Source: Iphione sp. A-MEVVRFRX5 (lineage: Eukaryota). From it: a DNA stretch of 64,000 nucleotides. The DNA is taken from positions 19,282,001 through 19,346,000 of the forward strand of contig OZ320319.1 of the NCBI GenBank assembly GCA_976226885.1, read 5' to 3'. A model generated the notes under the pieces. The model made no database searches and was not told where the DNA came from. It was given only the letters and a program-made list of their open reading frames with translations. Shown one piece after another: positions 9,140-42,246 of the stretch. Position 1 is the stretch's first letter. Each line of letters begins with the position of its first letter. Position numbers and translations under genes: made by a program.

Positions 9140-9995
9140 TTAGAAATGTGTTCTCTCTACTTAGTCAATGGAGGTCATATCTGCTGCAGTCTAAGTGCAA
9201 GGTCAGCAGATAGGATGACCTCCATTATATGCAGGCAGTCAAACCAGAAAAGGGGGGAGGAGCATATTCTTTGATGTTAGAGCCAAATTGGAGGCTGAGC
9301 CTCCAGTACCACTTTATCTGAAGCCCTATGGGATTCCCTATGTCGGAAGTAGATCTCTGTTTTCTCTGAAGTTGAGTCCAGGATGGAGGAGGCTAGAGTG
9401 GGAGGGAATCAGATGAGAGTGATTGACAGGTCCTCAGGTCCTGCTGTGAAGCCAAAAGGACTGACCGAGGGGAGGGGGCTGGAGCAGAGGGGCCCTGGTG
9501 GGAACACTCAAGCACGCTGCAGTGGCGCGACTGACTGAGGAGAGGATGCTAGACCGCGAGGGAACTGGGTGGGAACTCTCAAGCACACTGCAGCAGAGCT
9601 ACTGATCGAGGGGAGGGGGCTATAGCAGAGGGAACTGGGTGGGAGGGGGCTGGAGTTGTCCTGGGCACTGCTCCGGTGTCCCGTCACACAACGACTGCGA
9701 ATAGGCCAGGGGGGAGGGGGTTGGAGCCACCAGGACCCTGCCGGGGTGTATCNNNNNNNNNNNNNNNNNNNNNNNNNNNNNNNNNNNNNNNNNNNNNNNN
9801 NNNNNNNNNNNNNNNNNNNNNNNNNNNNNNNNNNNNNNNNNNNNNNNNNNNNNNNNNNNNNNNNNNNNNNNNNNNNNNNNNNNNNNNNNNNNNNNNNNNN
9901 NNNNNNNNNNNNNNNNNNNNNNNNNNNNNNNNNNNNNNNNNNNNNNNNNNNNGTAGAGGAAGAATATGACCTCCATTTGCAGCCCTGGCTGCACC
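9140..9995 (+). mobile_element. Non-autonomous Helentron (HINE/DINE-1-like), spans an N-gap
   Basis: 5' subTIR AATGGAGGTCAT (9167-9178) pairs with its inverted copy ending at 9226. 3' subTIR ATGACCTCCATT (9966-9977) is directly followed by stem-loop TGCAGCCCTGGCTGCA (9978-9993). This is the subTIR+IR ... subTIR+hairpin layout of HINEs. Confidence 0.7.
9753..9952. other. Assembly gap (N run)
   Basis: Run of n. Confidence 1.
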
Positions 9996-10827
9996 TGTTA
10001 CTTGTTCTGGCAATTTAGAAGAGATTCTATCAAAGATTACAACAAAACCTGCTTGCACATAGTGCTAATTAAGTAGGGTGACATTCAAACTTCAAAGAAG
10101 AGGTGGCATTTTGTCCAGGGTGACATTTTGCCTAAGAACCGAAATGGTACATACACAAAAGGTTCTTTAGTACAGTGCGATTGGTAGTCGATATGATTCA
10201 GTGCGGCCGTATCGGTGGCGATATGGTGTTTATTTATGGTGTAAATCATTCAGCAGTGACTAATATGTTCAAGGTAAGGGTTATAACTAATGATTTATGA
10301 ATTTCTTTAATTTTCAGCTGGTACGCCGCTCACAGTTACCGCCACTCACAACAACTGTCAATGACCGCCGCTCACCGTCACTGCCGCTCACAGTGACTGG
10401 TATTCCTGCAAAGAGCCTGGCCCGACCTTTGACCTCCGATGATCAAACTACACAACTACAGGTTTGAGAAATAAAAATGGTGAAGAGACTTTTAAGTCAG
10501 AATAGGGTTCTGATTAGAAGGAATACTTTAGACATGATCAGGGTACCGTTCTTTCAAAGTATCTATCCTCAGGCCAGAACTTGTTCCACCCATCCACTCA
10601 ACAACCAGACTAAGACAAGACAAGAGGAATAAAGGGTGCCGTTTTCTCTGTAAAGTCAGGAAAACCCTGTTTCCCCCAAACGCATTTATTCTAAATGCTT
10701 GGTTATCTTTTCACAGAACCTAGGCTAGCACTTGTTTATTATTGTAAAATTCAACTGAAAGTGAATCGTATCAAAACTTCAGAAGGCAGACGGATAAGGT
10801 GTGGGACCGTCTGTCCCGAAGCTGAAA

Positions 10828-11019
10828 ATGAAGACATGCATGGTTTTGGGTGGCACTAGAGGAATTGGTGCTGCTATGGCCAAAATGCTTCACCGAGATG
10901 GCCTCAGGGTTGCCGTTGCCTCCAAGAATCCAGCCCACGTTACAGAGTTTGTGCAAACGGCTAATGAGGACGGAGGAGATGTCTTGGGCCTCCCCTGTGA
11001 TGTCACCAATGAGTCGCAG
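10828..11019 (+). CDS. CBR4: Carbonyl reductase 4 / 3-oxoacyl-ACP reductase (SDR), coding exon 1
   Basis: MKTCMVLGGTRGIG (Rossmann GxxxGxG motif) ... PCDVTNESQ|gttatt phase 0 donor. Closely resembles the CBR4 N-terminus. Confidence 0.9.
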
Positions 11020-12079
11020 GTTATTATTTTCTTTGGATAAGTATGTTTCTTTCTCGCAGAGACCATCTGTTTATCAGTTCCCACAATATCAAAGGATCAC
11101 TTTATCAAAAGACACTTTATTGAAAATCTATACCAAAAGTGTGTGTGTGGTCAGAGTAGTTTTACATTTCTTAGGCCTAGTTTCCATGTGTTCGGGTTTC
11201 TTTTCCATATACGGTACGGAAGAATCTTGAGAATTTGGCCAAATTTACAGACATTTCCAGACAATGATGAATGGGATATCCACGTGTACAAACTTCCCAG
11301 CCTCTCCCTAGCTTCTCCCTGGCTTCCCTGCTAATGCATGGTATAAACCCACTGAATCTACAGTATAAACCTGCTGTTGAGTGTGTGTGCAGGTGTTTGT
11401 TATTTGTGATGATCTCAAGGAATTCTGCCCAAATCAGTTGAAACCGTGTGTTTGTTGTACTGATCACAAGGAATTCTGAGCAAATAATTTTTTATGCAAA
11501 TTACGTTCAAACGAGAGCATATTTCATTTCACATCTAATATACTGTATGTTCAACAGTCTTCCTGTAACCTTGGCCTGAGAACAATTGTCGCTTTCAACC
11601 TACTAATGTGTCTAGAGTCCAGAGAAATTTACGGACCACCACATACACAAGGAAAACCACCAGTTAATTTACTTCAGATTGTTTCCAAATCCACATACCT
11701 GGGGTCCAGAGGAAACATGCAGACCCATGGAAACTGGGCCTTAGAAACAAAACATTGAGGTGACCAGGTCACATCATTACATAGGTCACATTCAAACGTG
11801 TTCTGTTGCTATGGTAACCAAATGAATAAAAGAAAACAACCTTAATGAACAAATGCATGGCCTTTCATATGATATAATACATTACATATTGTGTACATGT
11901 ACATGTATATGTAATATACCCAAAACTACAGGTAAATTAGTTATGTTTTACCTACATTTATCTGCTCAAATTTCACTCTTTGTAGTGGTTAAGAATGAGT
12001 TTGATAAATTGTCTTTCTATATCATATTGATAAAAAGTCCCTTCTTTCAAGTGACCATTCGATATAGTGGCATGTGACC

Positions 12080-12893
12080 AAAAGTTGTACACACCTTTCT
12101 CATAGCCAGGCAGCCAAGTTTGTTACCAGAGATTCAANNNNNNNNNNNNNNNNNNNNNNNNNNNNNNNNNNNNNNNNNNNNNNNNNNNNNNNNNNNNNNN
12201 NNNNNNNNNNNNNNNNNNNNNNNNNNNNNNNNNNNNNNNNNNNNNNNNNNNNNNNNNNNNNNNNNNNNNNNNNNNNNNNNNNNNNNNNNNNNNNNNNNNN
12301 NNNNNNACTGACTTGGTCGGAAAGCCCCCCTTTAGCATAGGCAGCGTTGTAGCTGGTGGGTGGGAAAGAACAGTCTCCCACAAAGGGTCGTAACTCCATT
12401 ATGGAAATTTATTGCACACCATTCCAGAATAGTCTCAATCTTCCCCGGGTTAAGAGCCACCCCTGCTTGATACCAGGTGGCCCAAGTATGCCACCTCCAA
12501 TTGGAACAGTCAGCACTTGGAGGGTTTTATCTTCAACCCGCCCTGCTCCAGTCATCCCAAGACAGCAAATGTTATGTCCCGTCTGAGCATAAAGAGATGC
12601 GCCAGGTAAACAAGGGAGTCCATTCGAACCATCCCCCACCCGGACCACCTCCGCAATTGTTTCGAAGTGGATTGCTTATTGCAAGCGGCTTTTCCTTAAA
12701 CTGGAACACCCCGCGGGGGTGCATACAGCTGTCTTCTCCCTATTCTCCATCTGCAACCTAACCTGCTACTACCTGAGGCCATGTCCAGTGGGGAGAAGTA
12801 GCATGCTCCCTGCAACAAGTCCAAGGTGTCTTCTGTCCTGGGGAGTGGGTAGGCATCCTTCTTGATCCTATAAATATGACACCAGTAATCCAT
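12080..12893 (-). mobile_element. Degenerate Ty3/Gypsy pol (RT, probably RNase H) fragment in the CBR4 intron
   Basis: KKDAYPLPRTEDTLDLLQGACYFSPLDMASG and GLKIKPSKC*LFQLEVAYLGHLVS are Gypsy RT motifs. They carry stops and frameshifts. Confidence 0.85.
12138..12306. other. Assembly gap (N run)
   Basis: Run of n. Confidence 1.
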
Positions 12894-13136
12894 GCAAAAC
12901 CATCAGCCATCAGCACAGCCGCCTGCAGGTTCGAATGCCTCCCCCCACACACACACACATACACACGGTTGACCTCTTGACTCTCATGAACCCTCTCGTT
13001 AATGATTAGTTCCATCCACCTTACTGTGCCACTGCAGGCAGATTACTATTTTCTTATCAGGCCAAGACTCCTTAGACGTATCCTTTCTTTGCTGGTAGCT
13101 CTGTTTATTCCACACTCATGCTGTAAAAGACATAGT

Positions 13137-13265
13137 TGTCATCATCATCGTTGTCATCACTGTTGTTCTTCTCATTGTCATCATTATCCATCATCATAAT
13201 CGTCGTCGTTTTCATCGTCATCGTTGTCATTGTCATCATCATCATTCATCATCAATAATCATCAT
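13137..13265. repeat. Imperfect (CAT/CGT)n microsatellite, intronic
   Basis: Long catcatcatcgttgtcat tract. Confidence 0.85.
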
Positions 13266-13340
13266 TACCTGCATGAACTACACCAGCTACATAGACAAAC
13301 ATTGTGCAGTTATATTCTGAGTTGTGTGTGCTTTCTGCAG

Positions 13341-13871
13341 GTAATATCTGTGATGAATGAAGTGGCTGATCAGCTCGGACCAATCGAGGTGCTCATCAAT
13401 GCTGCCGGTATCCATGACGACCGACTGCTCGCCAGGACCACAGTCTCAGACATACACGAGCTGCTCAACGTCAACCTGGTTGGCACCATGCTCACATGTA
13501 AGGCGGTCATACGCAGCATGATGCAGCAGAAGTCTGGATGCATCATCAACATAGGAAGCATAGTGGGCAGTAAGGGCAATGCCGGACAGTGTGCATACAG
13601 TGCCAGCAAGGCTGGTATTGAGGGTTTCACCAAGTCCTTGGCAAAGGAGGTAGCAACACGTGGCATCAGGGTGAACTGCATTAATCCTGGGTACATCAGG
13701 ACGGACATGACGGCTGCCTTGGAGGGAAACGCCAGTCTGCTCAAACAGATCCCACTGCAAAGAATGGGAGAAGCTGAGGAGGTAGCACAGGTTGCGCGGT
13801 TCCTGCTCGATGCCACGTACATCACAGGACAAACCATATTCGTGGATGGGGGGCTGCAGATAAACCACTGA
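13341..13871 (+). CDS. CBR4: Carbonyl reductase 4, coding exon 2 (240 aa total)
   Basis: ctttctgcag|GTA phase 0. Contains LINAAGI, IINIGSIVG, catalytic YSASK and ITGQTIFVDGGLQ, matching vertebrate CBR4 motifs. Confidence 0.93.
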   Translation, partial: VISVMNEVADQLGPIEVLINAAGIHDDRLLARTTVSDIHELLNVNLVGTMLTCKAVIRSMMQQKSGCIINIGSIVGSKGNAGQCAYSASKAGIEGFTKSLAKEVATRGIRVNCINPGYIRTDMTAALEGNASLLKQIPLQRMGEAEEVAQVARFLLDATYITGQTIFVDGGLQINH

Positions 13872-13976
13872 GTGTGATACCAGGATAAGGAAGCGACTGT
13901 AGAGGGAAAGATAGGACATAAAGGCCCTGAAAAGGGGGGTAGGTTGAACGGTTAGAAATCTTCTGTCATCATTATC

Positions 13977-14110
13977 AATGGAGGTCACATCTGCGTTTAC
14001 CATGTGCGGTAGCAGATGGTGTGACCTCCATTACTAGAGCGGGGAAAACGCGAAAATGGGGGAGGAGCCTGTTGTTTGATCTTCGCGCCGGCATGGAGGC
14101 TCGGCCTCCA
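13977..14110 (+). other. Candidate Helentron 5' terminus: long hairpin plus second short hairpin
   Basis: AATGGAGGTCAC...ATCTGC/GCAGAT...GTGACCTCCATT (13977-14032) and TGGAGGC-TCG-GCCTCCA (14094-14110). Both are conserved at 9167-9226 and 9289-9305. Confidence 0.7.
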
Positions 14111-15136
14111 AGTACGACTAAGCTTTCGGTTACGATTTGTCATGTAATCTTTCGTAATGCCCCCATGAAGGGTTGAAGTGTTGCCTGGGCGGTTTTGTGG
14201 GAGTGCAGATGTTGTGCGCTCCTGGTGAGCGGGAGGGACGCGGGTGGGAGCTGGAGTGCAGATGTCGCGCGCTCCTCGTGACCGAGAGTGACGCGGTTGT
14301 GTGTGCACAGTTGCGTAATGATGAGAGGTCCAGCGTGATTGACACGTTTATGGGAGGAGACGAGGGTTTAGGAGGATTTCTGGCGCTGGTTGAGCGACCG
14401 GAAGGAGTGACCCGGCTGTTTCAGGTTGAAGCGTCGTTGTGTTACTATGGTGATGAAGTGGAGGCTGTAACGGAAGGAAGTTAGGTGCGAGTGGAGGCCG
14501 TAGCGGTAGAAAAGTTCGCGGGACATTCAAAAGCAGTTGTTTTATCGGCGTTTTTGTTATACTTAATTGTACTGGTCTGTATTCTTTTTAAATGTTTACC
14601 GGCTCAAATTCAATTTTTTAACAAATCGAGTTAATAAACACTTCCAGTTATAAGTGAGAATTAAATATAGTTATTTGTGTGAAGTCGAAACTAGTTTCAA
14701 GTGATGAAAGAATTACAGTAGATGTTTGGAAAGGTTAGTTGAATTAAGGATCGTAGCAGCTGTGCGTGTACTGAACGATTTGGGTTAGTGTACGTGTTTA
14801 TTTTTGGTTCAGGGGAGGGAGAACTTGACTCTGACTGGTCCGGCCGAAACAGGTTGCAACAAGTAGGAGGGCTGCCGGGTATGCACGTAACCTTGGGGTG
14901 CGAGCCGAGGTGGATCCGTCGGCAGGTTGTTGTTCCATCCGGTAATGCGAATGATTACTTGCCTTGGGGACGAAAAATCCTCAAGGTATTTCATTGCCAT
15001 TTGGTGCTTGTTACAGTAAAAAGGGAGAAGTAGGAGTTTGTGAATGTTTCGGGAAGACTGTTGGTGTATGTAGTTTTGCAATGCATTAGCGGGTATGAAA
15101 CACAAATGACATCTATTGAAGCATTTCGATTCGTTA

Positions 15137-15219
15137 GCGCTGCCATCTGGTGTCAAAGTGGCTAACTATGGTGAAATGTCAAAGTGTCCACTTCGATTGG
15201 TCAGTGCTGCCATCTAGTG
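15137..15219 (-). promoter_or_regulatory. Two tandem CTCF-like motifs in a ~67-bp duplication
   Basis: Reverse complements are CACCAGATGGCAGCGC (15137-15152) and CACTAGATGGCAGC (15206-15219), matching the CTCF core. Confidence 0.5.
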
Positions 15220-17898
15220 TTGAAGTGGCGAACTATTGGGAAATGTCAAACTGTTTGATTTTTGCCAATGTTTGTTTGAAGTGAACTTTGCAAAGTTTGA
15301 GATAGGTTTTAACTTTATGGTTCCATTCGTGTGTGTTTGAATGTGGTGTATGTAATCGTTAATGTCTTATATTTGGTGTTGCAGGGTTTGCTAAAGAGGT
15401 ACCTCGGTTTGTATGTGAAAACGTTAGTAATAAGATGCTCGAGTTGGTAATTGAAGTAGATGTTAAGTGGTAATTGTGTTTCTGTTATGTTGTGTTCTAA
15501 TAGGATGTTAAGGTGTTTATATAGGTTAAGGACACAGTATAGTGTGTATTAGTTTCAAGATGAGTGTCATACGAGTGTCAGTTTGAGGGAGTGTTTTGTG
15601 TGATATTGTAAGTGCCTTGAGATATATTAAAAGCAGCAGGAGATATTGTGTACTAGTTTTTATTTGAATAAGTGCAGCACTTGGGGGATGATAGGAACAG
15701 AGCAGGTGTCGGTGACATCGAGATACTTTTCGATCGCTGGTACAAGTGTGTATGTTATGAGTCAACGTGGTTGGCGCCGGTATACGTTGTTTCTGAAACA
15801 TGGAAGTATAATCGAGGAGTAGTTTGTACAAGGTATAGTTGAATGGTAAAGCTAAAAATCAAATTACTCTAGATAATTGAAGTTTTGGTTTTCCCGTGTT
15901 TACTGGTAGGTTGTTGCAGTTATGCTAGGTTGTATCAGTTAAACTGGTGTTAGTTCGTCCATTTTCCACCAGAGTTGATTGAGTTAAGCTATCATTAGTT
16001 CGTTTATTCTCCACCAGACTCGATCGTGGTGTTTACGTTCATGAGGTGGAGGTTTGGCGGAGAGATTTAATAAAATGGCTTTATGTGTATTTGTGAGAAT
16101 ATGCAGTAGTGTAAGTTCTGTAGTGTATGTAAATAATGATTAAGATAACTCATAAAATGGAAAATATAAGTATTAACTGGAAAGTATATAGATCTCTGCA
16201 AATGAGTTCTAAAGACACCACTTGCATGTTCGGTTAAGTTGTATATACTGCTTTGTATGGTTCGGTTTGACATGTTTTCCGGGATGGCTTCTCCCTTGGT
16301 TCGTTGGAGGGCTGCCCGGACACTTAGTGTTTAAGGACGGATTCCACTTGGATTGCCCAGGTCCGGTAGTACTCTGCGTGGTGTTGCCGGCAATTTTTGT
16401 ATAGGGTCGCTGTGATTAGCGGCCTGACAATGAATTAAAGATAAACTTCTTAACTGCAGTGTTACACGTATGAAGTTGTAATATTGTGTACCTGCGTCGT
16501 GAATTACAGGCGCATAATGGAGATTGTCATTGAAGAATTATAAAGTAATTCTGTTTGTGTATCGCAAGGCCCTTGTGTTGTATTACAAAGGGCAAAATAT
16601 ATATGCAGAGGTGATTAACAATGGACGTAAACGAGTAAAGCAAGTTCGATGAAGTTGTACGTGTTCTGAAATTTGAATATTGTTTTAGACCATATTATAA
16701 ATGTTCAGAGTGAATTTGTGAATTGATATTGTGGTAGAATAGTGCAAGCCATAAGTGTGTAGCTGCGGCTATCTATTACAAGTGTGAGGTGATATGATGG
16801 ATGAATGTATAAAGTACAAGAATGCAATAAACGTTTTTCATGAAATTGTTGTATTTGTTGTTTGTTTAGTGTAGTTGTAAGCGGTACGTATTAGTCTGTA
16901 AATGGAATGTATGGAACATCACTTAACATATTTGAACATTGTTCGAGTTTAGTATGGAACATTACTTAATGTAATTGAAGATTGTTCGAGTCTAGTATTA
17001 TCGGAATAATGCATAAGTCGGCGTCAATTTTGTGTGAGTTTTGGGGTTTGGTGGGTAGAATTTGTCAATCACTCAAGGCGTTATCGATAAGGGATCATGG
17101 TGTTAAGGAACAAGAATGTAAATTAGGTTCGAGACTAATGGTTTGGTGGTTACATATACGTTTTGTTTTGGTGTTTTGTAAAATTGGTATGATGTAAATA
17201 TATAGGTTATGTGGCAGATATCAATAATTGGAAGTTTACTACAATGAAGTCAGTATGGGTTTTCATTGCAGATAACTAGATTATGAGGTTAATATAAAAG
17301 TCAAGTAAGCGTTAGGTTGGGAGTAAGTGTAAATGTGTAGTGTATTAACATTGACGGGATTGGTTTTTCGGTGAGAAGTCAACAATATGTTTAGAGTTGC
17401 AACCAGTGTATACAAGAAAGATTATAGCACGTGGAAGATGATGGTGTGAGGACATCTAATCGAGACGGCAGGAAATGTAGTCATCAGTAGCATCTTCAGT
17501 CATGCGATCGTCGGAGGTATGGTGCGGATTCAGGTTTCACAGCAATAAACTTTGTTTTGGAAGAAATAGTGTTTAGTTTATCTTTAAGTTATAGAAGGAA
17601 TTCGTAACGGAATTTTGGAAATTCTATTCTTTCTCAGCTAGTTGCATAATGCAATAAGTTATATACGATTTGTGTTTTAGTTTTTTTCAAGTGATTTGGT
17701 TTGGTTTTACTACTAATGGTAATATTCAAATAGATGTTTTAAAAATTGCAGATAGTGCGCCTTTTTGTTCTGGAAAACGTAGTGGTAAAGTTCCTTCTAA
17801 ATTCGCGTAGGCGCAGGAATGGTAATAGATAGAAGTAGCTGTAGTAGGCAAAGTAAGAGCTACAAGTCGTATTAGTTTTAGATCGGAATGACATATGG

Positions 17899-18628
17899 TA
17901 CTATGGCGTATTTCTAAGGTTTACATAAAACTGAGCAACGATGAAGTGGAAGATATGTGGTTTTTATTCAGAGAAACGAATTATTGAGGTTATTAGAATG
18001 GTTTTACATACAAAAAAACGTATACAGTAGTAGATGTTGGTGACACAGTTGTGTATAGTCGATACAGAATTTAAAGTAAGGCCTAAACAAAAAATATCTG
18101 TGTTTCCGGTAACCCGACCGACCCTTCATTAGACTCTATTGTGATATTTTTTTTTTTCTTGTTTTTTGAATAACTTTGGCATGAATAATGATAGAGACAT
18201 GTTCTATACCTCAAATTGTTCTTTAGTTTTCTGGCTTCCATTTGACATATGTTTTCTTAAAAATCTAACCAGTATAAGTAATATTGCCATACACATCTGT
18301 TGCTTTCAGCGTTCTTTTACAGTGAAAAATAAAGAAAAAAAAAATATGTGATGTACCGACCGACCCTGTATTTTTTTAGCCTGTTACCGGAAACACAGAA
18401 CTTTTTTTTGTAGGCCTAAGGCGTAGTACAAAGTACTATGGCGTATTTCTAAGGTTTACATAAAACTGAGTAAAGATGAAGTGGAAGATATGTGGTTTTT
18501 ATTCAGAAAAACGAATTATTGAGGTAATTAGAATGCTCTTACATACCAAAAACCGTATACAGTAATAGATGTTGGTGACATAGTTGTGTACAGTTGATAC
18601 AGAACTTAAAGTAAGACGTAGTACAAAG
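17899..18628. repeat. ~195-bp tandem duplication interrupted by a MITE
   Basis: tactatggcgtatttctaagg... occurs at 17899 and 18434. The units align end to end once 18080-18419 is removed. Confidence 0.9.
18080..18416. mobile_element. PIF/Harbinger-type MITE (337 bp)
   Basis: TIRs GGCCTA...TCTGTGTTTCCGGTAAC / GTTACCGGAAACACAGA...TAGGCC, with a TAA target-site duplication (18077-79, 18417-19). Confidence 0.85.
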
Positions 18629-20169
18629 AACAAATCAAGATGTAATACAATTGTTTGGCAATAAGTAGTAAAGCACATATATGCAACGCGTCAAGCGAAA
18701 CACCACATTTGACAACACCGGGAATAGAAACTTCAGTAGGTATTCAGTCCAACATTGAAACAGGGTTGGTTATGTTCAATATGTGATAAAGTACCAGTAG
18801 GTGCGGTTCAGTGTACGTCATTGGTTGGCGGTAGCGCCAGGCGTCAATTTAGTTTTATATGTATTAACCGAGGTGTGGGTTTGGGGGATAACTTGATAGT
18901 AATGTAATAGTATAAAATAGAGCTTGTCTAGTGGGAGTACGCGAGGTTGTGAACAGGTAATAGAAGGTGCTGAAACAGGAAAGTGGTCTCAGGGTCAGGC
19001 GTATTGCACCAAACCATTGTTAAGGAAGGATAGTGTTGTAACTCATTGAATGAATCGTATGTACATATCGTCCTTATGAAATAACAATATAAGAGACTCA
19101 GTAAACGGAGCATAGAGTACCGCAAACATATAGTATATATTTACAATCGGTAGAAAAGTTCGTTGGCAAGGTGTTGTGTGTGATATTTTACATGACACCA
19201 CCTATGCAGTGTTTCTATGTGTTTTTCAACTTCGCAGAAACTGAAAACAGTATTTGTAGTTCTTGGTGTACTAGATACTTGCTAGGAAGTCGTACTAAAT
19301 TTGGATACTACATTGTGTAATCGTTGGTCATCGTAGTTCAACTAAGTTTTAAGTGAGCTTAGTTTTGTTCACCATTGAATGAATTTTTGAATTGTACAGT
19401 GCATTCAAAGATGTATATGACGATATACTAAATATTCAGGGAGTATTAAGTATATTGAACAGTTTTAGAAGCTTCTTGAAGTCTAGAGTAGTTTTATAAG
19501 GTGGGGCGCATTTAGTTAGTAATAACAAGTGAGGTTACTGTTTTCACGTTGAAGGAATGTTTTTGTATTGTACAGTCTTTGCAAAACGTTTTTCAGAATA
19601 GAGTAAATACACAGGAAGTTGTAGTAAAGTGATTAAATACTATAAGCTGATACAAGTGGAGAGTGTTATTAGTGGGTTGGGTGATGTTCAATAGGTCGGT
19701 CGGTGAAGGGTAGTGTTGTTTTGCATGAATCAAAGTGTAAAAAATTACAGCGTTGCATAGGTTAGTATATAAGATAAAGTGTAAGGAGAGGGAGTAAAGG
19801 AGTCTGGCGAACATTTTCAGAAGGTGATAAGAAAGGCGTGAGGTGTTCGTGTGTGTTAGGCATAGAGTACCTAAGTGATGTTACAGTTAAGGATATTGGT
19901 GTTGTTTTCAATGTTGTGTATGTATTGTGTTTGAGGGGTTTCACCAGAAACAAAAAGTGAAGGAGGAGTTTGTGGAGTTAGGTTAACGGTAACCTGAAGC
20001 TACTCTCACTTGAAATAGGTTTGTATGAATTTGGTGGAGCAAAGGCCAAACTCAAATTGTGGGTAGTCGCGTCGCTAGTAATGAGTTGGAATAGTAGTCT
20101 TTGTATATATCTATATATAAATTCAGAGGGAAATTTTATAGGAAGCAATGTAGCAGCTTAGTGCAATAG

Positions 20170-21350
20170 TGTGTAAGACAGGAATAGGGTTCCAGTTTGG
20201 ATTCGGGATGATAGGTGGAGGCGCAACAACAGTTCCCTTTGTTTTGGTCGAATCAATAAAAGTTGATCGATATATAGGCAGGAATTGGGTCTTGTTTGGA
20301 AACGGGATGATAGGTGGAAGCGGAACAACAGTTGTTGTTGTATTGGTCGAATCAATAAGAGTTGATCGATATATAGATAGGAACCGGGTTCCAGTTTGGA
20401 AAGGTGATGATACGTGTAAGGGCAACAACAGTTGTTTTTGTATTGTGTTGAATTAACAAATGTTGACAGATATAGTCTTTTGTCATGGTGGGTGTGTTTG
20501 TTGGTTATTGTAGTTGAACAAAGTCTTAAGTGAACTTAGTTTTGTTCACCATTGAATGAATTTCTTTGTGTCATACACTGTTTTCAAAGTTGTCCAGAAG
20601 AGATAGTAAATATACAGGGAGTATTAAGAAGTAGAAGGAGAGGCTCCAACATTGGATGACTGACCTGTCGAATCAATAAGAGTTAATAGATATATAGACA
20701 GGAATACGGTTCCAGTTTGGAAATGGGATGATAGGTTGAAGCCAGGAACAGTAGTAGGAGAGGCCCCAACATTGGATGACTGTGAACTTAGTTTTGTTCA
20801 CCATTGAATGAATTTCTTTGTGTTGTACACTGCTTTCAAAGTTGTCAAGAAGAGATAGTAGATACATAGAGAGTATTAAGAGGTAGAAGGAGTGGCCCCA
20901 ACATTGGATGACTGACCTGTCTAATCAATAAAAGTTGATAGATATATAGACAGGAATACGGTTCCAGTTTGGAAATGGGATGATAGGTTGAAGCCAGCAA
21001 CAGTAGAAGGAGAGGCCCCAACACTGGGTGACTGTAAACTTAGTTTTGTTCACCATTGAATGAATTTCTTTGTGTTGTACACTGTTTTCAAAGTTGTCAA
21101 GAAGAGTTAGTAAATATACAGAGAGTATTAAGAAGTCAAATGAGAGGCTCCAACATTGGAAGACTGCATGTGCTGAACCAATAAAAGTTGACAGATATAT
21201 AGACGGGAATTGGGTTCCAGTTTGGAAATGGGATGGTAGGTGGAAGTGTAGCAACAGTTGGTGCTCAAGTCGAATCAATAAAAAATGATAGATATACCTT
21301 GTTGTCCGTGCGGGTGTGTAAGCGTTGGTCATTGACTTGAAGTAATTTTA
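20170..21350. repeat. Composite tandem array: ~99-bp units, then ~252-bp higher-order units
   Basis: aggaat..ggttccagtttgg occurs at ~20180, 20280, 20379, then at 20700, 20952, 21204 interleaved with a ttagttttgttcaccattg block. Confidence 0.9.
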
Positions 21351-21377
21351 AGTGGGTTTAGTTTTGTTCAAAGTTGA

Positions 21378-22145
21378 ATGAAGTTTTTGTATTGTACAGT
21401 GTTTCTAACGTTGTACATGAAGATATAGTAAATATATAGAGAGTATTAAGAAGTAGAAGGAGAGGTCCCAATATTGGAAGACTGCATGCATTTAGTTTGC
21501 TGGACTCTATTGCACATACAATGGGACCCCTAATGTTAAGAACTACGCTCATTGTAGAGTTTTTACAAGAATAAGACCACAATGTGGAGGAGTGGACCAG
21601 TTTGCTGAAAAGGAGCAGTGGACAGGAAGTCAATGAAGTTTTTGTATTGTACAGTGTTTCTAACGTTGTACATGAAGATATAGTAAATATATAGAGAGTT
21701 TTAAGAAGTAGAAGGAGAGGTCCCAACATTGGAAGACTGCATGCATTTAGTTTGCTGCACTCTATTGCACATACAATGGGACTTCTAATGTTGACAACTA
21801 TGCTCATTGTAGAGTTTTTACAAGAAGAAGACCACAATGTGGAAGAGTGGACCAGTTTGCTGAAAAGGAGCAGTGGACAGGAAGTCAATGAAGTTTTTGT
21901 ATTGTACAGTGTTTCTAACGTTGTACATGAAGATATAGTAAATATATAGGGAGTATTAAGAAGTAGAAGGAGAGGTCCCAACATTGGAAGACTGCATGCA
22001 TTTAGTCTGCTGCACTCTATTGCACATACAATGAGACTTGTTGACAAGTACGCTCATTGTAGAGTTTTTACAAGAAGAAGACCACAATGTGGAGGAGTGG
22101 ACCAGTTTGCTGAAAAGGAGCAGTGGACAGGAAGTCAAGTGGAAG
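21378..22145. repeat. 255-bp tandem repeat, ~3 copies
   Basis: gaagtcaatgaag occurs at 21626 and 21881. The ORF track shows an 85-aa period. Confidence 0.92.
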
Positions 22146-23601
22146 TCAGTTGGACGGACTGAAATAGAAGGAAAGGTCCCAACATTGGACGACTGCATGC
22201 AATTCGTTAATTGCACTGTACTTTACATCCAATGGGACTTTCAACCTTGACAATTTTACTTTCGAGAGCTTTTACAAGTAGAAGACCATACCAGGAGCAG
22301 TATGCTAACATTTTCCATTTAATACAATGGGATTTTGAACCTTGACAACTTTTGTTTTGTAGAGTTTCACAAGAAGAAGACCACAATGTGACAGAGTGGA
22401 AGAGTTTTTGAAAAAGGAGTACAGGATGCCAACAACTCATAGTACGTTGACAGAAAGATTGTAAGCATTAAGTGAGTTTGCACTGTACTGTATATACAAT
22501 GGGACGTCTAACTTTGAAAGTTTCAATTTTTAGGTAATTGTTTCTTAACTATGTGAGTCGGACAATTTGCATACATGGCGTCTTTTTGACTTGCTGTATT
22601 ATATCAGGGACGAAGAATTATTACTGAAGTCAAAGAAGGACCACGTTGTGGAAGAGTCGGCTAAAATAGAAGGAGCAGACATCGATGTGGAGGAGTCAGT
22701 TGGTCACAAAGAGGTAGAACATATGGACGTAGACCATAATGTGGAAGAGTCGGCTGAAAAAGGAGCTGCAGACATTCATGTGTAGGAGTGACTTGCTCAG
22801 AAAGAGGGGGCAGCAGACTTTGATTAGGAGTAGTTGTTGGTATAAAGAAGAAGAATACTCTCATGTGGAAGAATCAACTTGTGGAAGGCGGATTGTGTTT
22901 ATTTTATGGGTACTTATGTGTTAAGTGTTTGTGTTTGTGGGTTCCGGGTTTTGTCAATGAAAGATTTACCATTTGCCCAACAGTCTGGTGTAGTACACAT
23001 GACATATATGTGAAAATCTACCAAGAGAAACCATGAAAAACAGCGGAAATATATGTGGTGAAGAAGAATTTGTTCGTTAGAAAGTGTAGTAGGAAGATGG
23101 TTATGGGTAGACCTGTTTAAGTATATGTGTGTAAGTTTTTGGGGTGTTACTGTTGGCGAACAAATAGTATAAGAGATGGTATGTACACCAATAACTGGCA
23201 GTTTGCTTAATTAACCAGTATCGGTTTGTTTTTGTTACATGTTGTAGTTGTGTTTAACTCATTGGATACTTTTTTGTTTTTATCTAGGGAGTGCGGTGGG
23301 TTAAGGATTTGTTGTCAAAGAAAGATTTTACTATCGGCTAAAAGATTCATGTAAAACATACGATACATATCTGAAGATTTACCAGGAGAAACCACGAAAA
23401 ACAGTGGTAATTATTGTTCAAGAAGAACTTGTATGTTACAAAGTTTAGTAGGAGAATGGTTATGGGTACCTTTGTTAAGTGTATTTGTGTATTTATGGTG
23501 TACTACATTGGAAAACAACTTTTAAAACAAGGTATGTACACAAAGTCACCTGGTAATATATACTACGAAGGCAGTCGGTCGTGATAAAATAGTTACGCTT
23601 C

Positions 23602-23982
23602 ACTGTGTCACATGTTTGAGTTTTGTCAAACTCATCGCACACATTCTTGTTCCAATGTAGGGAGTGTGCGAGGATGTGTAAGCAGCAGATATAATTGAGG
23701 GACATGTTGTGTGTATGGATGTTTAGTGTTGTAGAATAGTTACTGTGTCACATGTTCGAGTTTTGTCGAACTCATCGCACATATTCCTGTTCGAATCGAG
23801 GGAGTGTGCGAGGATGTGTAAGCAGTAGATATAATTGTTGAGGGACATGTTGTGTGTATGGATGTTTAGTGTTGTAGAATAGTTACTGTGTCACATGTTC
23901 GAGTTTTGTCGAACTCATCGCACACATTCTGTTCGAATCGAGGGAGTGTGCGAGGATGTGTAAGTAGTAGATATAATTGTGG
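23602..23982. repeat. ~140-bp tandem repeat, ~2.7 copies, with internal hairpins
   Basis: actgtgtcacatg occurs at 23602, 23742 and 23885. Confidence 0.92.
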
Positions 23983-24369
23983 AATAGGTCGTGTGCTGTA
24001 TGTTTCATGTAGTAAAAAGTATGTTTCATGGTATGTATACTGAATACAGCAGTTGATAGGTAGGAAATAGAGGTTATGCAAGGATATTGTATGTTAAGTA
24101 GTTTTGTTGTGAGGACAAAAGGTTTCTGTATTATTATACTTTATGGGTTTTAAGGTGTTTGCTGGTGTTTCTAGTGTAGTATAGAAATGAGGTGAGGACG
24201 GCAAGTTAAATGCAATTCAAATGAAGACAATGATATTTTATATAATTTGTGGAATTTCGAACGAAGTGTAGGCACGAAGTTGTTCAGGACGAGAAGAAGG
24301 CTGTAATGGATATGAATGAACTGGCAGAACACCATTTATATTAGTAAAAGTATTAAGCAAAATATGACC

Positions 24370-25420
24370 ATTTGTGTAATAAAGGTAGGTGGGACAGTAG
24401 TACACCTGATAAGTGTAAGCTGGAGTTCATAATATAGTACATCTTTGCTAAAAGTGAACCAAGGGATGAAAACGTAAAATGGAGTGTAAAGGCTTAATGA
24501 AAGAAAGTGTGATGATATTTAATTTGACAAGTGTAGGAAGGGGTATCTGGTAATGAGTTTTTTATGTAAACGTGAACCAAAGGATGAAATTGTATAACCA
24601 AGTCTACAGCGTAATAGAGTGCAATAAGCGTAGTAGTATAAAAGGAATGTGGTAGTACGAGGCGAAAGACATAGTGCATAAATGCTTAGGAGTATGACAA
24701 GAACAGGATCAGAAGGAAGTTGCAATGGGCATGAATGAATTGTCGCTTTCTAGTAACTGGTACTAGAAAGCGACAGCAAGATGTAAGTTTTAGTGTAATG
24801 AAGGGAGGTGGGATGGTGTTCGTTTGATAAGTGTAATTCGGATACCACGGAGATGGAAGTTTTAGTGTAATTAAGGGAGGTGGGACGGTGGTACATTGGA
24901 TAAGTGTAACTTTGAGTACACGATATAGTTTTAGTTATTGTAAAAGTGAAAGAAGGGACCAAAACGCAAAATGGAGTCTAGATGCGTAATGAAGGGAAGT
25001 GAGTGGTTTCGTTTGGCACGTGTAAGCTGGAGTATACCATATAGTTTTAGTTGTGTTATCTACGAGTTAATGTAGAGACTGTAGTGATAACTGAGGCATA
25101 GTGTAACGAAGGTAAGTGGGACGGTATTATATCTGACAAGGTTAAGTTGAGTACACGATGTAGTTTAGTTCCGATTTAAAAGTGAACCAAGGGGACAAGG
25201 ATTTTAGTGAAAGAATTAGAGATTAAGAACCGGTCGAGAAGAAGGTTGCAATGAATATTGTTCAACTCGCATAATACTAGTAACGTGCACTGGAATGTGT
25301 CAGGTAAAATCTAGGCTTCAGCGTATGAAGGAAATTGGGATTGTATTTTCCTGACTAGTGTAATATGAAGTATATGATATAGTTTTAGTTTTTTCCTAAA
25401 AGTGAACTAAGGGATAAGGA
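24370..25420. repeat. Diverged array of gggaggtgggatggt...gataagtgtaa / aaaagtgaaccaaggg modules
   Basis: Related motifs at about 24382, 24803, 24875, 24994 and 25109. Confidence 0.7.
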
Positions 25421-25494
25421 TTGAGTGTATTCATGAGAGAAAAAATAGCTGTGAAGGTAGCCCAAGAATGTGAGTTGGATTATTACAGCATTCT

Positions 25495-25715
25495 GTAGAG
25501 GTAGGGAATTTAGGAGATAGTCTGAAGAAGGCATTGATCAAAGAAGCATTGGCATTGATACTTAGGAACTTGAACAATGTAAGGGAAAAATTTATGCAGG
25601 AGCATAACATTCGGTAGAGGTAGGGAATTTAGGAGATAGTCTGAAGAAGGCATTGATCAAGGAAGCATTGGCATTTATACTTAGGAACTTGAACAATATA
25701 AGGGAAAATCCATGC
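25495..25715. repeat. 119-bp tandem duplication (diverged third copy near 25980-26060)
   Basis: gtagaggtagggaatttaggag occurs at 25495 and 25614. Confidence 0.9.
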
Positions 25716-28050
25716 AGGAATGAATCAAGAACTGGACGAGAAGAAGGTTGTAATGGAGATGAAGAAATTGACAGAATTCCATTAAGTTCAACTGGAAAGT
25801 GTCATGTAAAATTTGGCCAATTGTCTAATGAAGGTTGGTGAGACGGAATTACACTTGTTAAGTGTAAGTTGGTTTTTACTATGTAGTTTTAGTTGCTTTT
25901 AAAAGTGAAACAAGGGATAAGGACTTCAGTAAATGAAAATGAGTACGAAGAGCTGTGGAAGCAAGACAAGGACGCGGTATTGGATTAGTATAGTTTTGGG
26001 AGAAGAAGGTACTAATCAAAGAAGCATTGGTACTGAGCAGTGAGGAACCTGAACAATACAAAGGAATTCATTCAATGGTCAACAAGACTAACCTTGAGTT
26101 GCAATAAGTGTGGCGGTGACTTATGTTATTGGCGGAAACATTAGATAGTTATTTACATAATTGGTGAAAGAAATAGAGGCACATGTGTTGGTATTTGACC
26201 GAATGATTGCGGAAAACATTATGGATTTGAATTCAAAGAAGTTTTTAAAGTTTAATTTAGAGGCAAGGTTTGTAACTTAGGTGGGTAGGTTAATTGTTTG
26301 TAGTTAATGCGATAAATACACAATGTTTGGTGTCGATTTCTGATGACCTTGGTAGAAGTACAGGTGGATACAATAGGTAAGTTTGGTAAGTAATAAGGAA
26401 GAAAAGTCAATGTTTTTGTACGCAGAGAAGAATGTATGGATGAGGTTGGTTCTTGAAGAAGTAGACGGAAAGAGGAATAGTTTAGGTGCTAGATTCTTTG
26501 CAAAGAAGAACTGGTGAAAAAATATGCTGCACAAAACAGTTTACAAGGTTATAGAGTCTGTGTCGAGTGTAGTCTGAAGTGGCTGAAGGAAGGTAGCAGT
26601 ATAAGTTTACGATAAGTACTTTTCACACGTTCTCAATGGAAGAATCGAAGTAAATGGATTGAGTGTTCTGGTGCAGGGAGAACACTTCTGAAATGAAATA
26701 CGTGTTAGTTAAGAGTATAAAGTCGAACTCGGTAAGACATAATGTTCGAGACGTGAGAGTGTGATAACAAGACAAGAGGTACAGAGTATTTACTAAAACT
26801 ATACCTAATGTGACAATAATGTGTGTTGTGAAATAATACTAATCTGGAAAGGAGTCAGGTTTAAATCAATTCACTTAGTTGGGATGAAAAGTGTGTGTTC
26901 ATTTCAGTGTCCGTAAAGTAGTCATGGCTCTGACATGATCTTACACATGAAGGTCCACAGAATATACAGTGCTACGTGAAGTAATTTACCAAAGACGTTT
27001 TGGGTTTCTGAAGGAGTTACGGCGGAAAGATGGTTGTAGTCTTGGGGTTGATGTCTTGTCGGGCGCGGAGCAGATGTTTTAGTCAGTAGAATCGTCCGGA
27101 CATGTGACGCGTAGGTAAGTATGGCCGAAGTGCATCTCAGAGTGTCAGGTGCCTGAGATTGGTATTAACCATACTTGGTACAGAAGGCCAGAAGTTAATG
27201 ACGAAACCGGTGTAGAGTGTTGAAGTTATTATGAGGTGTTTCGTTGTCTCGGTGTTCTGTAAAGAAAAATGTGTGTTTTAGGTTGTTGGCGCTTTCAGTA
27301 GAGTAGTGTTAAAATTTCATGAATGGTCAATGAGTTATTGTAGTCGGTATAGTGTATACAAAAGTTGGTAAGTGAAAAATGTATCAGTAAAATAGTCGGT
27401 AAACACAATGTTCTGTGACAACTTTACCAATGTGGAAAACAAGAGAGTGTGCCTATAACTTACCTGAAGTCGTTGTTGAGTTGGAAAAAGGTTACTACAT
27501 GTAATCTTGTGATGGTGTCCGGGGCGATGTGTTGTCCGTGAATGTCTGTAGGAGAAAAGTTGTTGTTAACGATGGTTCCATTTCTGCGTAATTTATGATG
27601 GATAAGTGGAAGTGTACGTAGATTAGGGAGGCAAGCAAAGGACAAGTGTGTAGTTGGTTTTTACATTTAAGGTGTTTGGTGGTGGTAGTGAGTCCCGGCG
27701 GGGTTTGGGATGTAGCATTAATTATTAATTCAATTTGTTTCGTTCATCAGGCATGGATAGTTACAGTGGCAAATGCAGAATATCGGTGCTAGTGTTCATA
27801 TGTGCAACATTTAAACTAGATTAATATGGTATGTTACATCTTGCATAATTTACTGAACTAATGATGTAGATTGAGGATATAACTATATAGTTCAACAATA
27901 GGTTTCATGATGATAGTAACATTGGTAAAAATTAGCTTACAGCTGATTGTTCATATAGTGTTAGTTAGAAGTGGTTGGATTGCCGATTTCAATAATCTAT
28001 GACAACATTGTTAGGGAAGATGTGGTATGTAACGGGACACTAGTAAGTAG

Positions 28051-28515
28051 GATTCCTGGTCAACTGGGCCCGTAAGTCAATTGGGCCCGTCAATTGGGCC
28101 CGTAAGTGATTCGGTCCACCAGGGGACTTGTGCCAGATATACAGGTTCAATTCCTTCTCATGTCAGTTGACATTTTTTCCAGTCACGATTCTTTACAAAA
28201 AAGGGGGGGGGGTGCGGGGGGTCTCCCTCCACCCTTTTCAGTCAAGATCCTTTACAGAAATAAGGGGGGTGTGGGGGGTCTCACATATAGACATATATTA
28301 CCAACAGAATGCACTAGATGGAGTTTGAACATTGTGGCCGCCGCCGCCGACTACGGGCCGGTAGTGCGACAACACAGTGGTTGTTGCCGCGGCCGTTACC
28401 ACCGCCCATTACGGGCCGGCAGTGCGACACTCTCGCCGCCGCCGCCACCACCACCGCCGACTAGGGGCTTAGTTGACGGGTTCAATTGACTTACGGGCCC
28501 AGTTGACCGGTTACC
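28051..28515. mobile_element. 465-bp MITE with 8-bp TSD, possibly Merlin-type
   Basis: TIR core GGTCAACTGGGCCCGTAAGTCAATTG. TSD GTAAGTAG at 28043-50 and 28516-23. The right end reads GGTAA on the reverse strand, as Merlin ends do; the left 7 nt are diverged. Confidence 0.8.
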
Positions 28516-29550
28516 GTAAGTAGTGTGTGTACAAAAGAGGACTCAATTGACAGGGTTTAATCATATATATGCGTATTTGTAGTTTGTATAGGTCAACGTA
28601 AAAATTGTAGTTGCAATTTAGAAGTTGAAAAACTGGGTTGGAAAAAGTAGACCATGGTGAAATTTCTGAAGGCGGAAGTTGTAAGTAGCGTAGGTTAGGT
28701 TGTATTTTGCAAGTGTTAATAGTGAATGTCAAGTGTACATGTTTGGCACTTACCGGAGTTAAGGCGTTTTTATGGTGGATGTTGAGATAGCCGATGTCCT
28801 TATAGTTGTCTATTAGGTATGTATGGTCAACCGCTGAGTTGACAGCTGTAGGGTTTAAACAAAGTGCACAGATATGTAAGTTTGTTGGAACAGGAAGTTG
28901 AAAAGTTGATAAAATGTTCTATAACAAATGGTGTACGGAAGTTTAAAAGTGGCAGTGAAAGTGTCCATCGGGCGGATTGTTTGGCCAAGTTTCTTAACAG
29001 GGTAGTATATGTGTGGAAGAAACTTACAAAGCGTAGCGTTAGTGAAGTGATGAGTATTGTAGAACCAATTCAGTTGAGGTTTAAGTTGACTGAGTATCTA
29101 CAGGTCAGTGCTACGTGTCAGGTGAGTGGTTGTAATTCCGGGAAAAAAAGTGGTCAATTGTGTAATTATAAGTGTGTTCGGTTCATGGACAAATTACACT
29201 TATGATGTCTAGTTGTTTATATGGTTAAAGTATAGGCTCTATATGTACAAATCGGTAAGGGATAACATGTTACTGAAAAGTAGTGTAGAAATTTATGTTG
29301 TTATTTACATTGCGGTTTTACCTTGAAACATAGAGCAGTGATATTCCAAAAGATTTACATTACTTAATTATGAGGACCAGGAAGATTGTCATACACATAT
29401 GATGTTTTTTCCATGCTTTACAGTTAGGTAACGTGTTATATAGGTAGTGTAAAGGTTCTATCAGAACAACATGTACGTTGTTATTGTTTTTGCATATGTT
29501 CGGAATGTAGTCATGGTTTGTAGAGTTTGTATTGTGCGACAAGTGTGTTA

Positions 29551-29770
29551 CAGGGGGGGTCAGGGGGGCTCAATAACGTTTCACCAAGAATTCAGATGAG
29601 CCGAGTGCTTAAAGAAAGGTCAGATAATGCTTCACCATGAAATAATTCCCTGATAATGCTTCACTAGTATTTGCTCAATCACGTTTCACCACAATTGAGA
29701 AGGGCAAATAACGTTTAGCGCTGAACTAAAATCATCAATAACGTTTCACCAAAATAGTTGACACCCCCTG
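29551..29770. mobile_element. 220-bp hAT-type MITE
   Basis: Ends CAGGGGGGGTC / GACACCCCCTG and internal aataacgtttcacca repeats. Flanks share gtgtgtt, but there is no perfect 8-bp TSD. Confidence 0.7.
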
Positions 29771-29897
29771 TGTGTGTTCTTATTGTATAATGTGAGCGTA
29801 ACTGACTAGTATTCAAGTTGGTGTATTAAAATGAAGTTTCCGTCAATCTTATGATGGTGGTCGTATAGTGTGTCGAGTTGTTGTACGTACACGAATT

Positions 29898-42183: not shown

Positions 42184-42246
42184 GTTAACGTGCTCAAATT
42201 CTGCTACTGGCGGGTAATTCTAGTCAGTACGTTGACAGTTTGGAAG

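What the first reader, a model, noticed from the sequence alone, without database searches (positions are those of the whole stretch)
9140..14120. Small HINE supplies the key to the giant element's ends, with compensatory changes in the hairpin
9140-9315 and 13952-14120 are diverged homologs. The stem reads GGTCAT/ATGACC in one and GGTCAC/GTGACC in the other (paired change), loops differ, and both keep a 3-nt bulge and a second TGGAGGC-NNN-GCCTCCA hairpin. The small copy ends in subTIR plus stem-loop (9966-9993). This orients both elements on +, the same strand as Rep, and predicts the giant's 3' signature. The repeated GGAGG/CCTCC cores are candidate Rep recognition sites (inference).
Basis: partly seen in the sequence, partly recalled or inferred. 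Interest (0 to 1): 0.75.

Follow-up and report, generated by a model that had tools for sequence, protein, structure and literature searches.

The report
Helentron transposon left ends, one orphaned
Two diverged copies of the folded left end of a known type of rolling-circle transposon (Helentron) are really there, one on a short gene-less copy with a proper right end and one 21 kb upstream of an intact transposase gene, but the right end predicted for the large element is not in the window.

Summary
9140-9313 and 13952-14119 are true homologs: local alignment score 106 against 22.6 +/- 2.5 for shuffles. Both fold into the same bulged 18-20 bp hairpin plus a second TGGAGGC-NNN-GCCTCCA hairpin. 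The stems are 34/36 identical, and the two differences form one compensatory pair (T·A to C·G). Loops and spacers are only about 50% identical.

The small copy has the textbook layout of a non-autonomous Helentron (HINE):
- 5' subTIR with a nearby complementary inverted repeat
- 71-bp central tandem repeats
- a 14/14 complementary 3' subTIR, followed directly by a palindrome

A 200-N gap separates its 3' 41 nt from the rest, so its size and continuity are unproven.

The 2129-aa ORF at 35188-41577 is a Helentron transposase (OTU, DUF6570, Rep with the GSPHVH signature, PIF1 helicase, weak AP-endonuclease). It lies on the same strand as both modules.

The predicted 3' signature of the giant element was tested five ways and is absent from 14.1-64 kb. 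The link from module to Rep rests only on orientation, on the lack of any nearer module, and on a strong strand bias that starts within about 0.5 kb of the module. One compensatory pair in two sequences is suggestive, not covariation. Overall this is a new member of a known kind. Earlier notes of this scan report similar giant Helentrons on other pieces of this genome.

The parts
9140..9166 (+). Small copy: 27-nt 5' leader starting TTAGAAAT. Homology with the large copy begins here.
   Evidence: Leader identity is 20/27. The upstream flanks are not significantly alike.
9167..9226 (+). Small copy: hairpin 1. The 5' subTIR AATGGAGGTCATAT pairs with a nearby inverted repeat. Lower stem 12 bp, 3-nt bulge AGG, upper stem 8 bp, 17-nt loop.
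   Evidence: -18.7 kcal/mol, z -6.9..
9247..9263 (+). Small copy: conserved G-rich box GAAAAGGGGGGAGGAGC.
   Evidence: 16/17 identical to 14052-14068.
9289..9305 (+). Small copy: hairpin 2, TGGAGGC-TGA-GCCTCCA.
   Evidence: 2 matches, 0 expected; -7.0 kcal/mol; present in the centroid fold.
9459..9644 (+). Small copy: central 71-bp G-rich tandem repeats (2.6 copies before the gap).
   Evidence: Interior GC skew is +0.30.
9753..9952 (.). 200-N assembly gap inside the small copy. The size and continuity of the element are unknown.
   Evidence: No reads were available.
9964..9977 (+). Small copy: 3' subTIR ATATGACCTCCATT, a 14/14 complement of 9167-9180.
9978..9993 (+). Small copy: 3' palindrome TGCAGCC-CT-GGCTGCA directly after the 3' subTIR.
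   Evidence: -5.6 kcal/mol, z -1.9; the only subTIR-plus-palindrome site in the window.
13952..13976 (+). Large copy: 25-nt 5' leader starting TTAGAAAT, 80 nt after the stop codon of a short-chain dehydrogenase ORF.
13977..14032 (+). Large copy: hairpin 1. The 5' subTIR AATGGAGGTCACAT pairs with GTGACCTCCATT. 3-nt bulge GGT, upper stem 6 bp, 17-nt loop.
   Evidence: -18.8 kcal/mol, z -6.7..
14052..14068 (+). Large copy: G-rich box GAAAATGGGGGAGGAGC.
14094..14110 (+). Large copy: hairpin 2, TGGAGGC-TCG-GCCTCCA. Homology with the small copy ends at 14119.
14120..52700 (+). Strand-biased body (G about 26%, C about 12% on +) that starts at the large copy's module and contains the Rep gene. The right limit is only approximate, and whether it is one mobile unit is not shown.
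35188..41577 (+). Intact 2129-codon Helentron transposase ORF: OTU-like protease, DUF6570, HUH Rep, PIF1 helicase and a weak C-terminal AP-endonuclease.
43146..43502 (+). Possible exon of an OB-fold (RPA/SSB-like) helper gene downstream of Rep.
   Evidence: Weak only: OB_MEIOB_N, E 0.042.

Best explanation
Both stretches are left terminal modules of one Helentron (HLE2) subTIR family.

The small copy (9140 to about 9993-10006) is a non-autonomous HINE. It has a left module, central tandem repeats and a right end made of a subTIR plus a palindrome.

The second module (13952-14119) is the left end of a diverged relative. It points the same way as an intact Helentron Rep/helicase/endonuclease gene 21 kb downstream. 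It most likely marks the left boundary of a long element that carries that gene. The right end of that element lies beyond 64000 or has been lost.

Inferred mechanism:
- The HUH Rep acts on the + strand when that strand is single-stranded.
- It recognises the conserved hairpins, whose stems all present TGGAGG/CCTCCA, and nicks in the T-run 25-27 nt upstream of hairpin 1.
- The 5'-to-3' PIF1-type helicase peels the strand off.
- Transfer ends at the 3' subTIR and palindrome. The 3' subTIR repeats the 3' arm of hairpin 1 (ATGACCTCCATT) in direct orientation.

Shown: the homology, the folds, the conservation pattern, the gene identity and the orientations. Inferred: the nick sites, the role of single-stranded DNA, Rep binding to GGAGG, and the link between module and Rep.
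For: - Homology of the modules, with sharp bounds.
- Identical fold architecture with strong z-scores.
- Stems 34/36 identical with one compensatory pair, against about 50% identity in the loop, bulge and spacers.
- The 3' subTIR is 14/14 complementary and is followed by a palindrome.
- 71-bp central repeats.
- TGGAGG/CCTCCA occurs 4 times per module against 0.53 per kb in the window, with none of 20000 shuffles reaching 4.
- The ORF carries Herpes_teg_N/OTU, DUF6570, Helitron_like_N and PIF1, the Helentron-diagnostic FYRVEFQHRGSPHVH (criteria in PMC4067079) and a weak Exo_endo_phos domain. Its relatives are OTU-Rep-PIF1(-EN) proteins of marine invertebrates.
- This layout matches published HINE and HLE2 descriptions (PMC4067079, PMC7492417, PMC11417382).
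- For the link to Rep: same strand; no other module in 64 kb by covariance model; and a strand-bias domain that begins within about 0.5 kb of the module and runs through the Rep gene.
Against: - No 3' end for the large element anywhere in the 50 kb downstream. Published work says right ends are usually better conserved than left ends (PMC11417382).
- A 21-kb distance from left end to Rep is far beyond ordinary Helentrons.
- Only two copies could be examined. No other copies, empty sites or reads were available, so the exact termini and the TT target are unproven.
- The small copy is split by a 200-N gap.
- ORFs at 32.1 kb and 53.7 kb (minus strand) are paralogous, so they sit on both sides of Rep. 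That also fits a shorter Helentron sitting inside a gene array.
Confidence: 0.62

Rival explanations
1. The module at 13952-14119 is an orphan left end. It could come from a HINE or from a 3'-truncated copy, and it merely lies upstream of an unrelated or separately bounded Helentron core. On this reading there is no giant element that starts at 13952.
For: - No matching right end in 50 kb.
- The Rep gene is 21 kb away.
- 3'-truncated copies are a known outcome for these elements (PMC7492417).
- Paralogous minus-strand ORFs flank Rep on both sides.
Against: - No other left module or subTIR pair nearer to Rep.
- The strong strand bias starts at the module and continues uniformly through 21 kb into and beyond Rep.
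- The module's hairpins are intact.
Confidence: 0.3
2. The small element is an ordinary cut-and-paste TIR MITE with target-site duplications, and the inverted repeats are transposase-binding TIRs.
For: - A 14-nt inverted repeat near both ends.
- A 7-nt TTTAGAA occurs at 9139-9145 and again at 10014-10020.
Against: - The inverted repeats are subterminal. Homology with the second copy extends 25-27 nt outside the left repeat.
- The ends are asymmetric: two hairpins on the left, one palindrome on the right.
- The sequences directly outside the repeats are not duplicated.
- The TTTAGAA repeat is no better than chance (63% of 500 shuffles aligned at least as well).
- A Helentron Rep gene of matching orientation is present.
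Confidence: 0.04
3. The conserved palindromes work as double-stranded symmetric protein-binding sites, or are kept symmetric by repair between the arms. On this reading they are not single-strand hairpins, and the paired change says nothing about folding.
For: - A paired change keeps dyad symmetry as well as it keeps pairing.
- With two sequences the covariation control is uninformative.
Against: - A conserved 3-nt bulge position and a conserved 17-nt loop length with diverged sequence fit a folded strand better than a symmetric duplex site.
- HUH enzymes act on single strands. This is established knowledge of the IS200/IS605 family and of Helraiser, not tested here.
Confidence: 0.15

Closest known systems
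HINE / DINE-1-type non-autonomous Helentrons (Thomas et al. 2014, PMC4067079; oyster Cg_HINE, PMC7492417)
   Same: - A 5' subTIR whose inverted-repeat partner lies just inside it.
- Central satellite-like tandem repeats.
- A 3' subTIR followed by a short palindrome.
- T-run at the boundary.
- No coding capacity in the readable part.
   Different: - The partner repeat is 36 nt away. The distance is 1-12 nt in oyster and 3-22 nt in DINE-1.
- The interval holds a second nested stem, giving an 18-20 bp bulged hairpin.
- There is an extra TGGAGGC hairpin and a conserved G-box.
- The leader is 25-27 nt, against 2-4 nt in the mite families.
- Copy number and the TT target could not be tested.
Autonomous Helentron, HLE2 subgroup b (HELIANO, PMC11417382)
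   Same: - One ORF with OTU/Herpes_teg_N, DUF6570, HUH Rep, PIF1 helicase and a C-terminal EEP endonuclease.
- Plus orientation relative to the left end.
- A possible OB-fold helper gene.
   Different: - The left end is 21 kb upstream of Rep.
- No right terminal repeat or stem-loop within 22 kb downstream of Rep.
- The body has an extreme strand bias that was not seen in a related locus (L007).
- The best protein relatives are only 39-40% identical.
IS200/IS605 (IS608 TnpA) single-strand transposition (analogy only)
   Same: - An HUH enzyme.
- Subterminal hairpins on one strand at both ends.
- The left cleavage site lies some tens of nt 5' of the left hairpin, and the right site a few nt 3' of the right hairpin.
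   Different: - A different enzyme class: Y1 HUH without a helicase, in bacteria.
- No evidence here for guide-sequence base pairing.
- Nothing was tested biochemically.

Membership tests
HINE (non-autonomous Helentron) | 11-15 nt subterminal inverted repeats at both ends | tested here: met
   9167-9180 against 9964-9977, 14/14 complementary. An assembly gap lies between them.
HINE (non-autonomous Helentron) | Inverted repeat complementary to the 5' subTIR just inside it (DINE-1 and oyster type) | tested here: met
   9215-9226 pairs with 9167-9178, and the fold is significant.
HINE (non-autonomous Helentron) | Short palindrome (stem-loop) after the 3' subTIR | tested here: met
   9978-9993, 7-bp arms.
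HINE (non-autonomous Helentron) | Central tandem or microsatellite repeats, and no coding capacity | tested here: met
   A 71-bp unit in 2.6 copies. The only ORFs here run through the N gap. The content of the gap is unknown.
HINE (non-autonomous Helentron) | Insertion between T and T without target-site duplication | tested here: inconclusive
   Both 5' boundaries start with a T-run (GT|TTAGAAAT and GG|TTAGAAAT). The 3' terminus cannot be fixed without more copies or an empty site.
HINE (non-autonomous Helentron) | Interspersed multicopy family that shares its termini with an autonomous partner | not testable with these tools
   The genome is not searchable. Scans of the metagenome, genome and viral collections gave only chance hits, and no run was listed.
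Helentron (HLE2 subgroup b), large element | HUH Rep plus PIF1-like helicase with the Helentron signature (F/Y-x-R ... RGSPHxH) and the DUF6570 marker | tested here: met
   (Helitron_like_N 1e-28, PIF1 5e-23, DUF6570 3e-18). One search shows FYRVEFQHRGSPHVH.
Helentron (HLE2 subgroup b), large element | C-terminal AP-endonuclease domain | tested here: inconclusive
   Exo_endo_phos, E 6e-5, 23.3 bits, just under the 24.5-bit cut-off.
Helentron (HLE2 subgroup b), large element | Right terminal inverted repeat plus 3' stem-loop matching the left end | tested here: not met
   Absent from 14.1-64 kb by pattern, blastn-short, inverted-repeat-plus-palindrome scans and covariance model. It may lie beyond the window.
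TIR MITE | Inverted repeats at the very termini, flanked by a target-site duplication | tested here: not met
   Homology extends 25-27 nt outside the left repeat. There is no duplication next to the repeats.

The most novel reading that the evidence does not exclude
The module at 13952 is the true left end of a single rolling-circle element of at least 38-50 kb. Its whole transferred strand is depleted of C (G 26%, C 12%) from the first bases after the terminal hairpins. On this reading the strand bias is a footprint of repeated single-strand passage, and Helentrons in this animal reach the size of small DNA viruses.
Probability: 0.25. Interest if true: 0.7.

Novelty: new member of a known kind. 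Interest (0 to 1): 0.35.

Why it matters
The small copy gives a clean, oriented template for the ends of this genome's Helentron family. That template is what is needed to delimit the unusually long Helentron-linked regions that this scan has noted on several pieces of the genome.

The terminal module is a concrete substrate for the first biochemical test of how a Helentron (HLE2) Rep recognises its ends. It has two hairpins with a shared TGGAGG core, a conserved bulge position and a G-box. As far as the papers read here show, such biochemistry has been done only for the Helitron-1 enzyme Helraiser.

By itself the finding is a good annotation of a known kind of element, not a new mechanism.

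Tried and rejected
- Reads: the look-up of sequencing runs listed no run. Read laying was therefore unusable, and neither the gap nor insertion polymorphism could be checked.
- Other copies: the hairpin pattern in the metagenome, prokaryote-genome and viral collections gave six chance palindromes, such as bacterial terminators. The findings index gave nothing by sequence.
- Giant 3' end: subTIR patterns with up to 3 mismatches, with or without a following palindrome. blastn-short with the small 3' end and with both modules. All inverted 10-12-mers between 13.9-35.2 kb and 41.6-64 kb with a palindrome after the right arm. All GC-containing palindromes from 41.6 to 64 kb. None was convincing. 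A 14-nt inverted pair at 33477/52591, near the fall in strand bias, is within chance expectation and has no hairpins.
- Covariance model of the module over the window with filters off: only the two known copies.
- TGACCTCCATG at 6143 and 7034 belongs to an unrelated duplicated repeat.
- Homology upstream of TTAGAAAT: a GATA[G/A]G[A/G]AAGCGAC block lies 42-54 nt upstream of both copies, but it is not significant (p 0.05-0.16).
- TTTAGAA as a target-site duplication, or as the start of a tandem copy after the small 3' end: no better than chance.
- A related Helentron locus from another animal (L007): no similar termini and no strand bias.
- Published HINE supplements: the subTIR core appears only inside oyster satellite monomers, not as termini.
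- Rfam: no hit in the window.
Full report
**Observation**

The two stretches are real homologs. A local alignment of 9100-9752 against 13900-15000 is bounded at 9140-9313 and 13952-14119. It scores 106 against 22.6 +/- 2.5 (max 33) for shuffles. It begins at a shared TTAGAAAT, and no alignable sequence follows.

Both modules contain the same features in the same order:
- a 25-27 nt leader
- a long hairpin: lower stem AATGGAGGTCA[T/C] with [A/G]TGACCTCCATT, a 3-nt bulge on the 3' side, upper stem ATCTGC/GCAGAT (two more pairs in the small copy), and a 17-nt loop
- a G-rich box, GAAAA[G/T]GGGGGAGGAGC
- a second hairpin, TGGAGGC-NNN-GCCTCCA

As single-stranded DNA the long hairpins fold at -18.7 and -18.8 kcal/mol, z -6.9 and -6.7. 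Both hairpins appear in the centroid fold of each whole module. The second-hairpin pattern occurs only at these two places in 64 kb, with none expected by chance.

**The paired change**

Of the 18 shared pairs in hairpin 1, 17 are invariant and one (T·A to C·G) changed on both sides. The stems are 34/36 identical. The loop, bulge and spacers are about 50% identical.

My own estimate: given two changes among 36 stem positions, the chance that they fall on one pair and keep pairing is about 1% (1/35 x 1/3). With two sequences the tool's shuffle control is uninformative (261 of 500). This is one suggestive event, not a covariation analysis. It also cannot separate a folded strand from a symmetric duplex site.

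**The small copy**

Its 3' part reads ATATGACCTCCATT (9964-9977), a 14/14 complement of the 5' subTIR. TGCAGCC-CT-GGCTGCA follows immediately (9978-9993). This is the only subTIR-plus-palindrome site in the window. A 71-bp G-rich tandem array occupies 9459-9644.

This is the published HINE layout: 5' subTIR with a nearby complementary repeat, central repeats, and 3' subTIR plus palindrome (PMC4067079; PMC7492417; PMC11417382).

The inverted repeats are subterminal, the ends are asymmetric, and no duplication adjoins the repeats.

**The gaps**

The 200-N gap at 9753-9952 lies between the tandem array and the last 41 nt of the small copy. No sequencing run was listed, so continuity and true length are unknown, and 'small' is an assumption. 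The second gap (12138-12306) lies in the spacer and touches neither module.

**The transposase**

ORF 35188-41577 (+) is open for 2129 codons. It carries:
- Herpes_teg_N/OTU, DUF6570, Helitron_like_N and PIF1
- the Helentron-diagnostic FYRVEFQHRGSPHVH (criteria from PMC4067079)
- a borderline C-terminal Exo_endo_phos domain

Its best public relatives are OTU-Rep-PIF1(-EN) proteins of hemichordates, sea cucumbers and bivalves, at only 39-40% identity. The host is therefore not in the protein collection. Plus orientation relative to the left end is the usual arrangement (PMC4067079).

**Testing the prediction**

I looked for it between 14.1 and 64 kb in these ways:
- patterns with up to 3 mismatches
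- blastn-short with the small 3' end and with both modules
- all inverted 10-12-mers paired with a downstream palindrome
- all GC-containing palindromes right of Rep
- a covariance model of the module, filters off

Nothing was found. Right ends are reported to be better conserved than left ends (PMC11417382), so this absence is meaningful. The right end is either beyond 64000 or lost, or the module is not the end of the element that carries Rep.

**What links the module to Rep**

Three things link them, none decisive:
- they are on the same strand
- there is no other module or subTIR pair nearer to Rep
- a striking compositional domain begins at the module

On the + strand, G is about 26% and C about 12% uniformly over 14120-35187 (GC skew +0.34 to +0.38). 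The skew is +0.20 in the Rep ORF and +0.29 at 41.6-46.9 kb, and it fades to zero by about 58-60 kb. The sequence to the left, up to 13.5 kb, is at -0.05.

The onset lies within about 0.5 kb of 13952. The small copy's interior has the same bias (+0.30). C is depleted in every dinucleotide context, but T barely exceeds A, so plain C-to-T deamination of a single strand does not explain it. A related locus from another animal shows no such bias.

Against a single giant unit, minus-strand ORFs at 32.1 kb and 53.7 kb are paralogs and lie on both sides of Rep. That also fits a shorter element sitting inside a gene array.

Earlier notes of this scan (s1-356235, s1-334799, s1-327826, s1-325128) report similar long Helentron regions with unresolved 3' ends, and the same odd strand bias, on this and other pieces of the genome. 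I treat these as leads only.

**Mechanism (inferred)**

- The Rep acts on the + strand.
- It recognises the hairpins, whose stems all present TGGAGG/CCTCCA. This motif occurs 4 times per module against 0.53 per kb in the window. The arms of a hairpin are not independent, so there are effectively three sites per module, counting the G-box.
- It nicks in the T-run upstream of hairpin 1.
- It ends transfer at the 3' subTIR and palindrome.

The 3' subTIR repeats the 3' arm of hairpin 1 in direct orientation. The same + strand word, ATGACCTCCATT, therefore stands at both ends. This recalls the subterminal hairpins of IS200/IS605, by analogy from established knowledge and not tested here.

**Verdict**

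This is a new member of the known Helentron/HINE kind, with a somewhat elaborate left module. The key fits the left end only. Whether a giant element exists remains open.

Noticed in passing
window 14120-52700 (fading to about 59500): Extreme strand bias on the + strand: G about 26%, C about 12%, with C depleted in all dinucleotide contexts. CpG observed/expected is 0.86-1.0 inside, against 0.57 in the left flank. The onset is sharp at the 5' module and the decay on the right is gradual. The cause is unknown.
   Followed up: partly
window 13200-13871 (+): An ORF encoding the C-terminal three quarters of a short-chain dehydrogenase (adh_short_C2, 4.5e-47) ends 80 nt before the large copy's left end. 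Its N-terminal part is encoded by a (TCA)n-like microsatellite (13131-13265). No exon for the Rossmann-fold start was found upstream.
   Followed up: partly
window 30380-30449 (+), 43872-43938 (-), 51512-51581 (-), 29419-29452 (-): A roughly 70-nt repeat containing TATATAAAA occurs in both orientations around the Rep gene. It may be a promoter or first-exon module shared by a local gene family.
   Followed up: partly
window 32088-32396 (-) and 53738-54160 (-): Two minus-strand ORFs, one on each side of Rep, are paralogs (30% identity over 98 aa, E 5e-8). The second has coiled-coil-like weak Pfam hits.
   Followed up: no
window 20176-25719: A run of satellite-like tandem arrays with units of 99, 252, 255, 143 and 119 bp lies inside the strand-biased body. 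These resemble the central repeats that HINEs carry.
   Followed up: no
window 9085-9098 and 13884-13897: The block GATAGGAAAGCGAC / GATAAGGAAGCGAC lies 42-54 nt upstream of both left ends. It is not significant on its own (p 0.05-0.16), but it could mean that the true 5' termini lie further out.
   Followed up: yes
window 5684-7272: An unrelated 891-bp unit is duplicated directly at 100% identity, with a 199-nt inverted segment between the copies. This is probably another transposon or an assembly duplication.
   Followed up: no
window 1-708: A 59-bp tandem repeat array lies at the left edge of the window.
   Followed up: no
window 4564-5238 (-): An ORF with a weak Death domain hit (E 9e-5). 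It is probably an exon of a host gene.
   Followed up: no
window 43146-43502 (+): An ORF with a faint OB-fold (MEIOB/RPA-like) hit lies downstream of Rep. This fits the single-strand-binding helper gene that many Helentrons carry.
   Followed up: no
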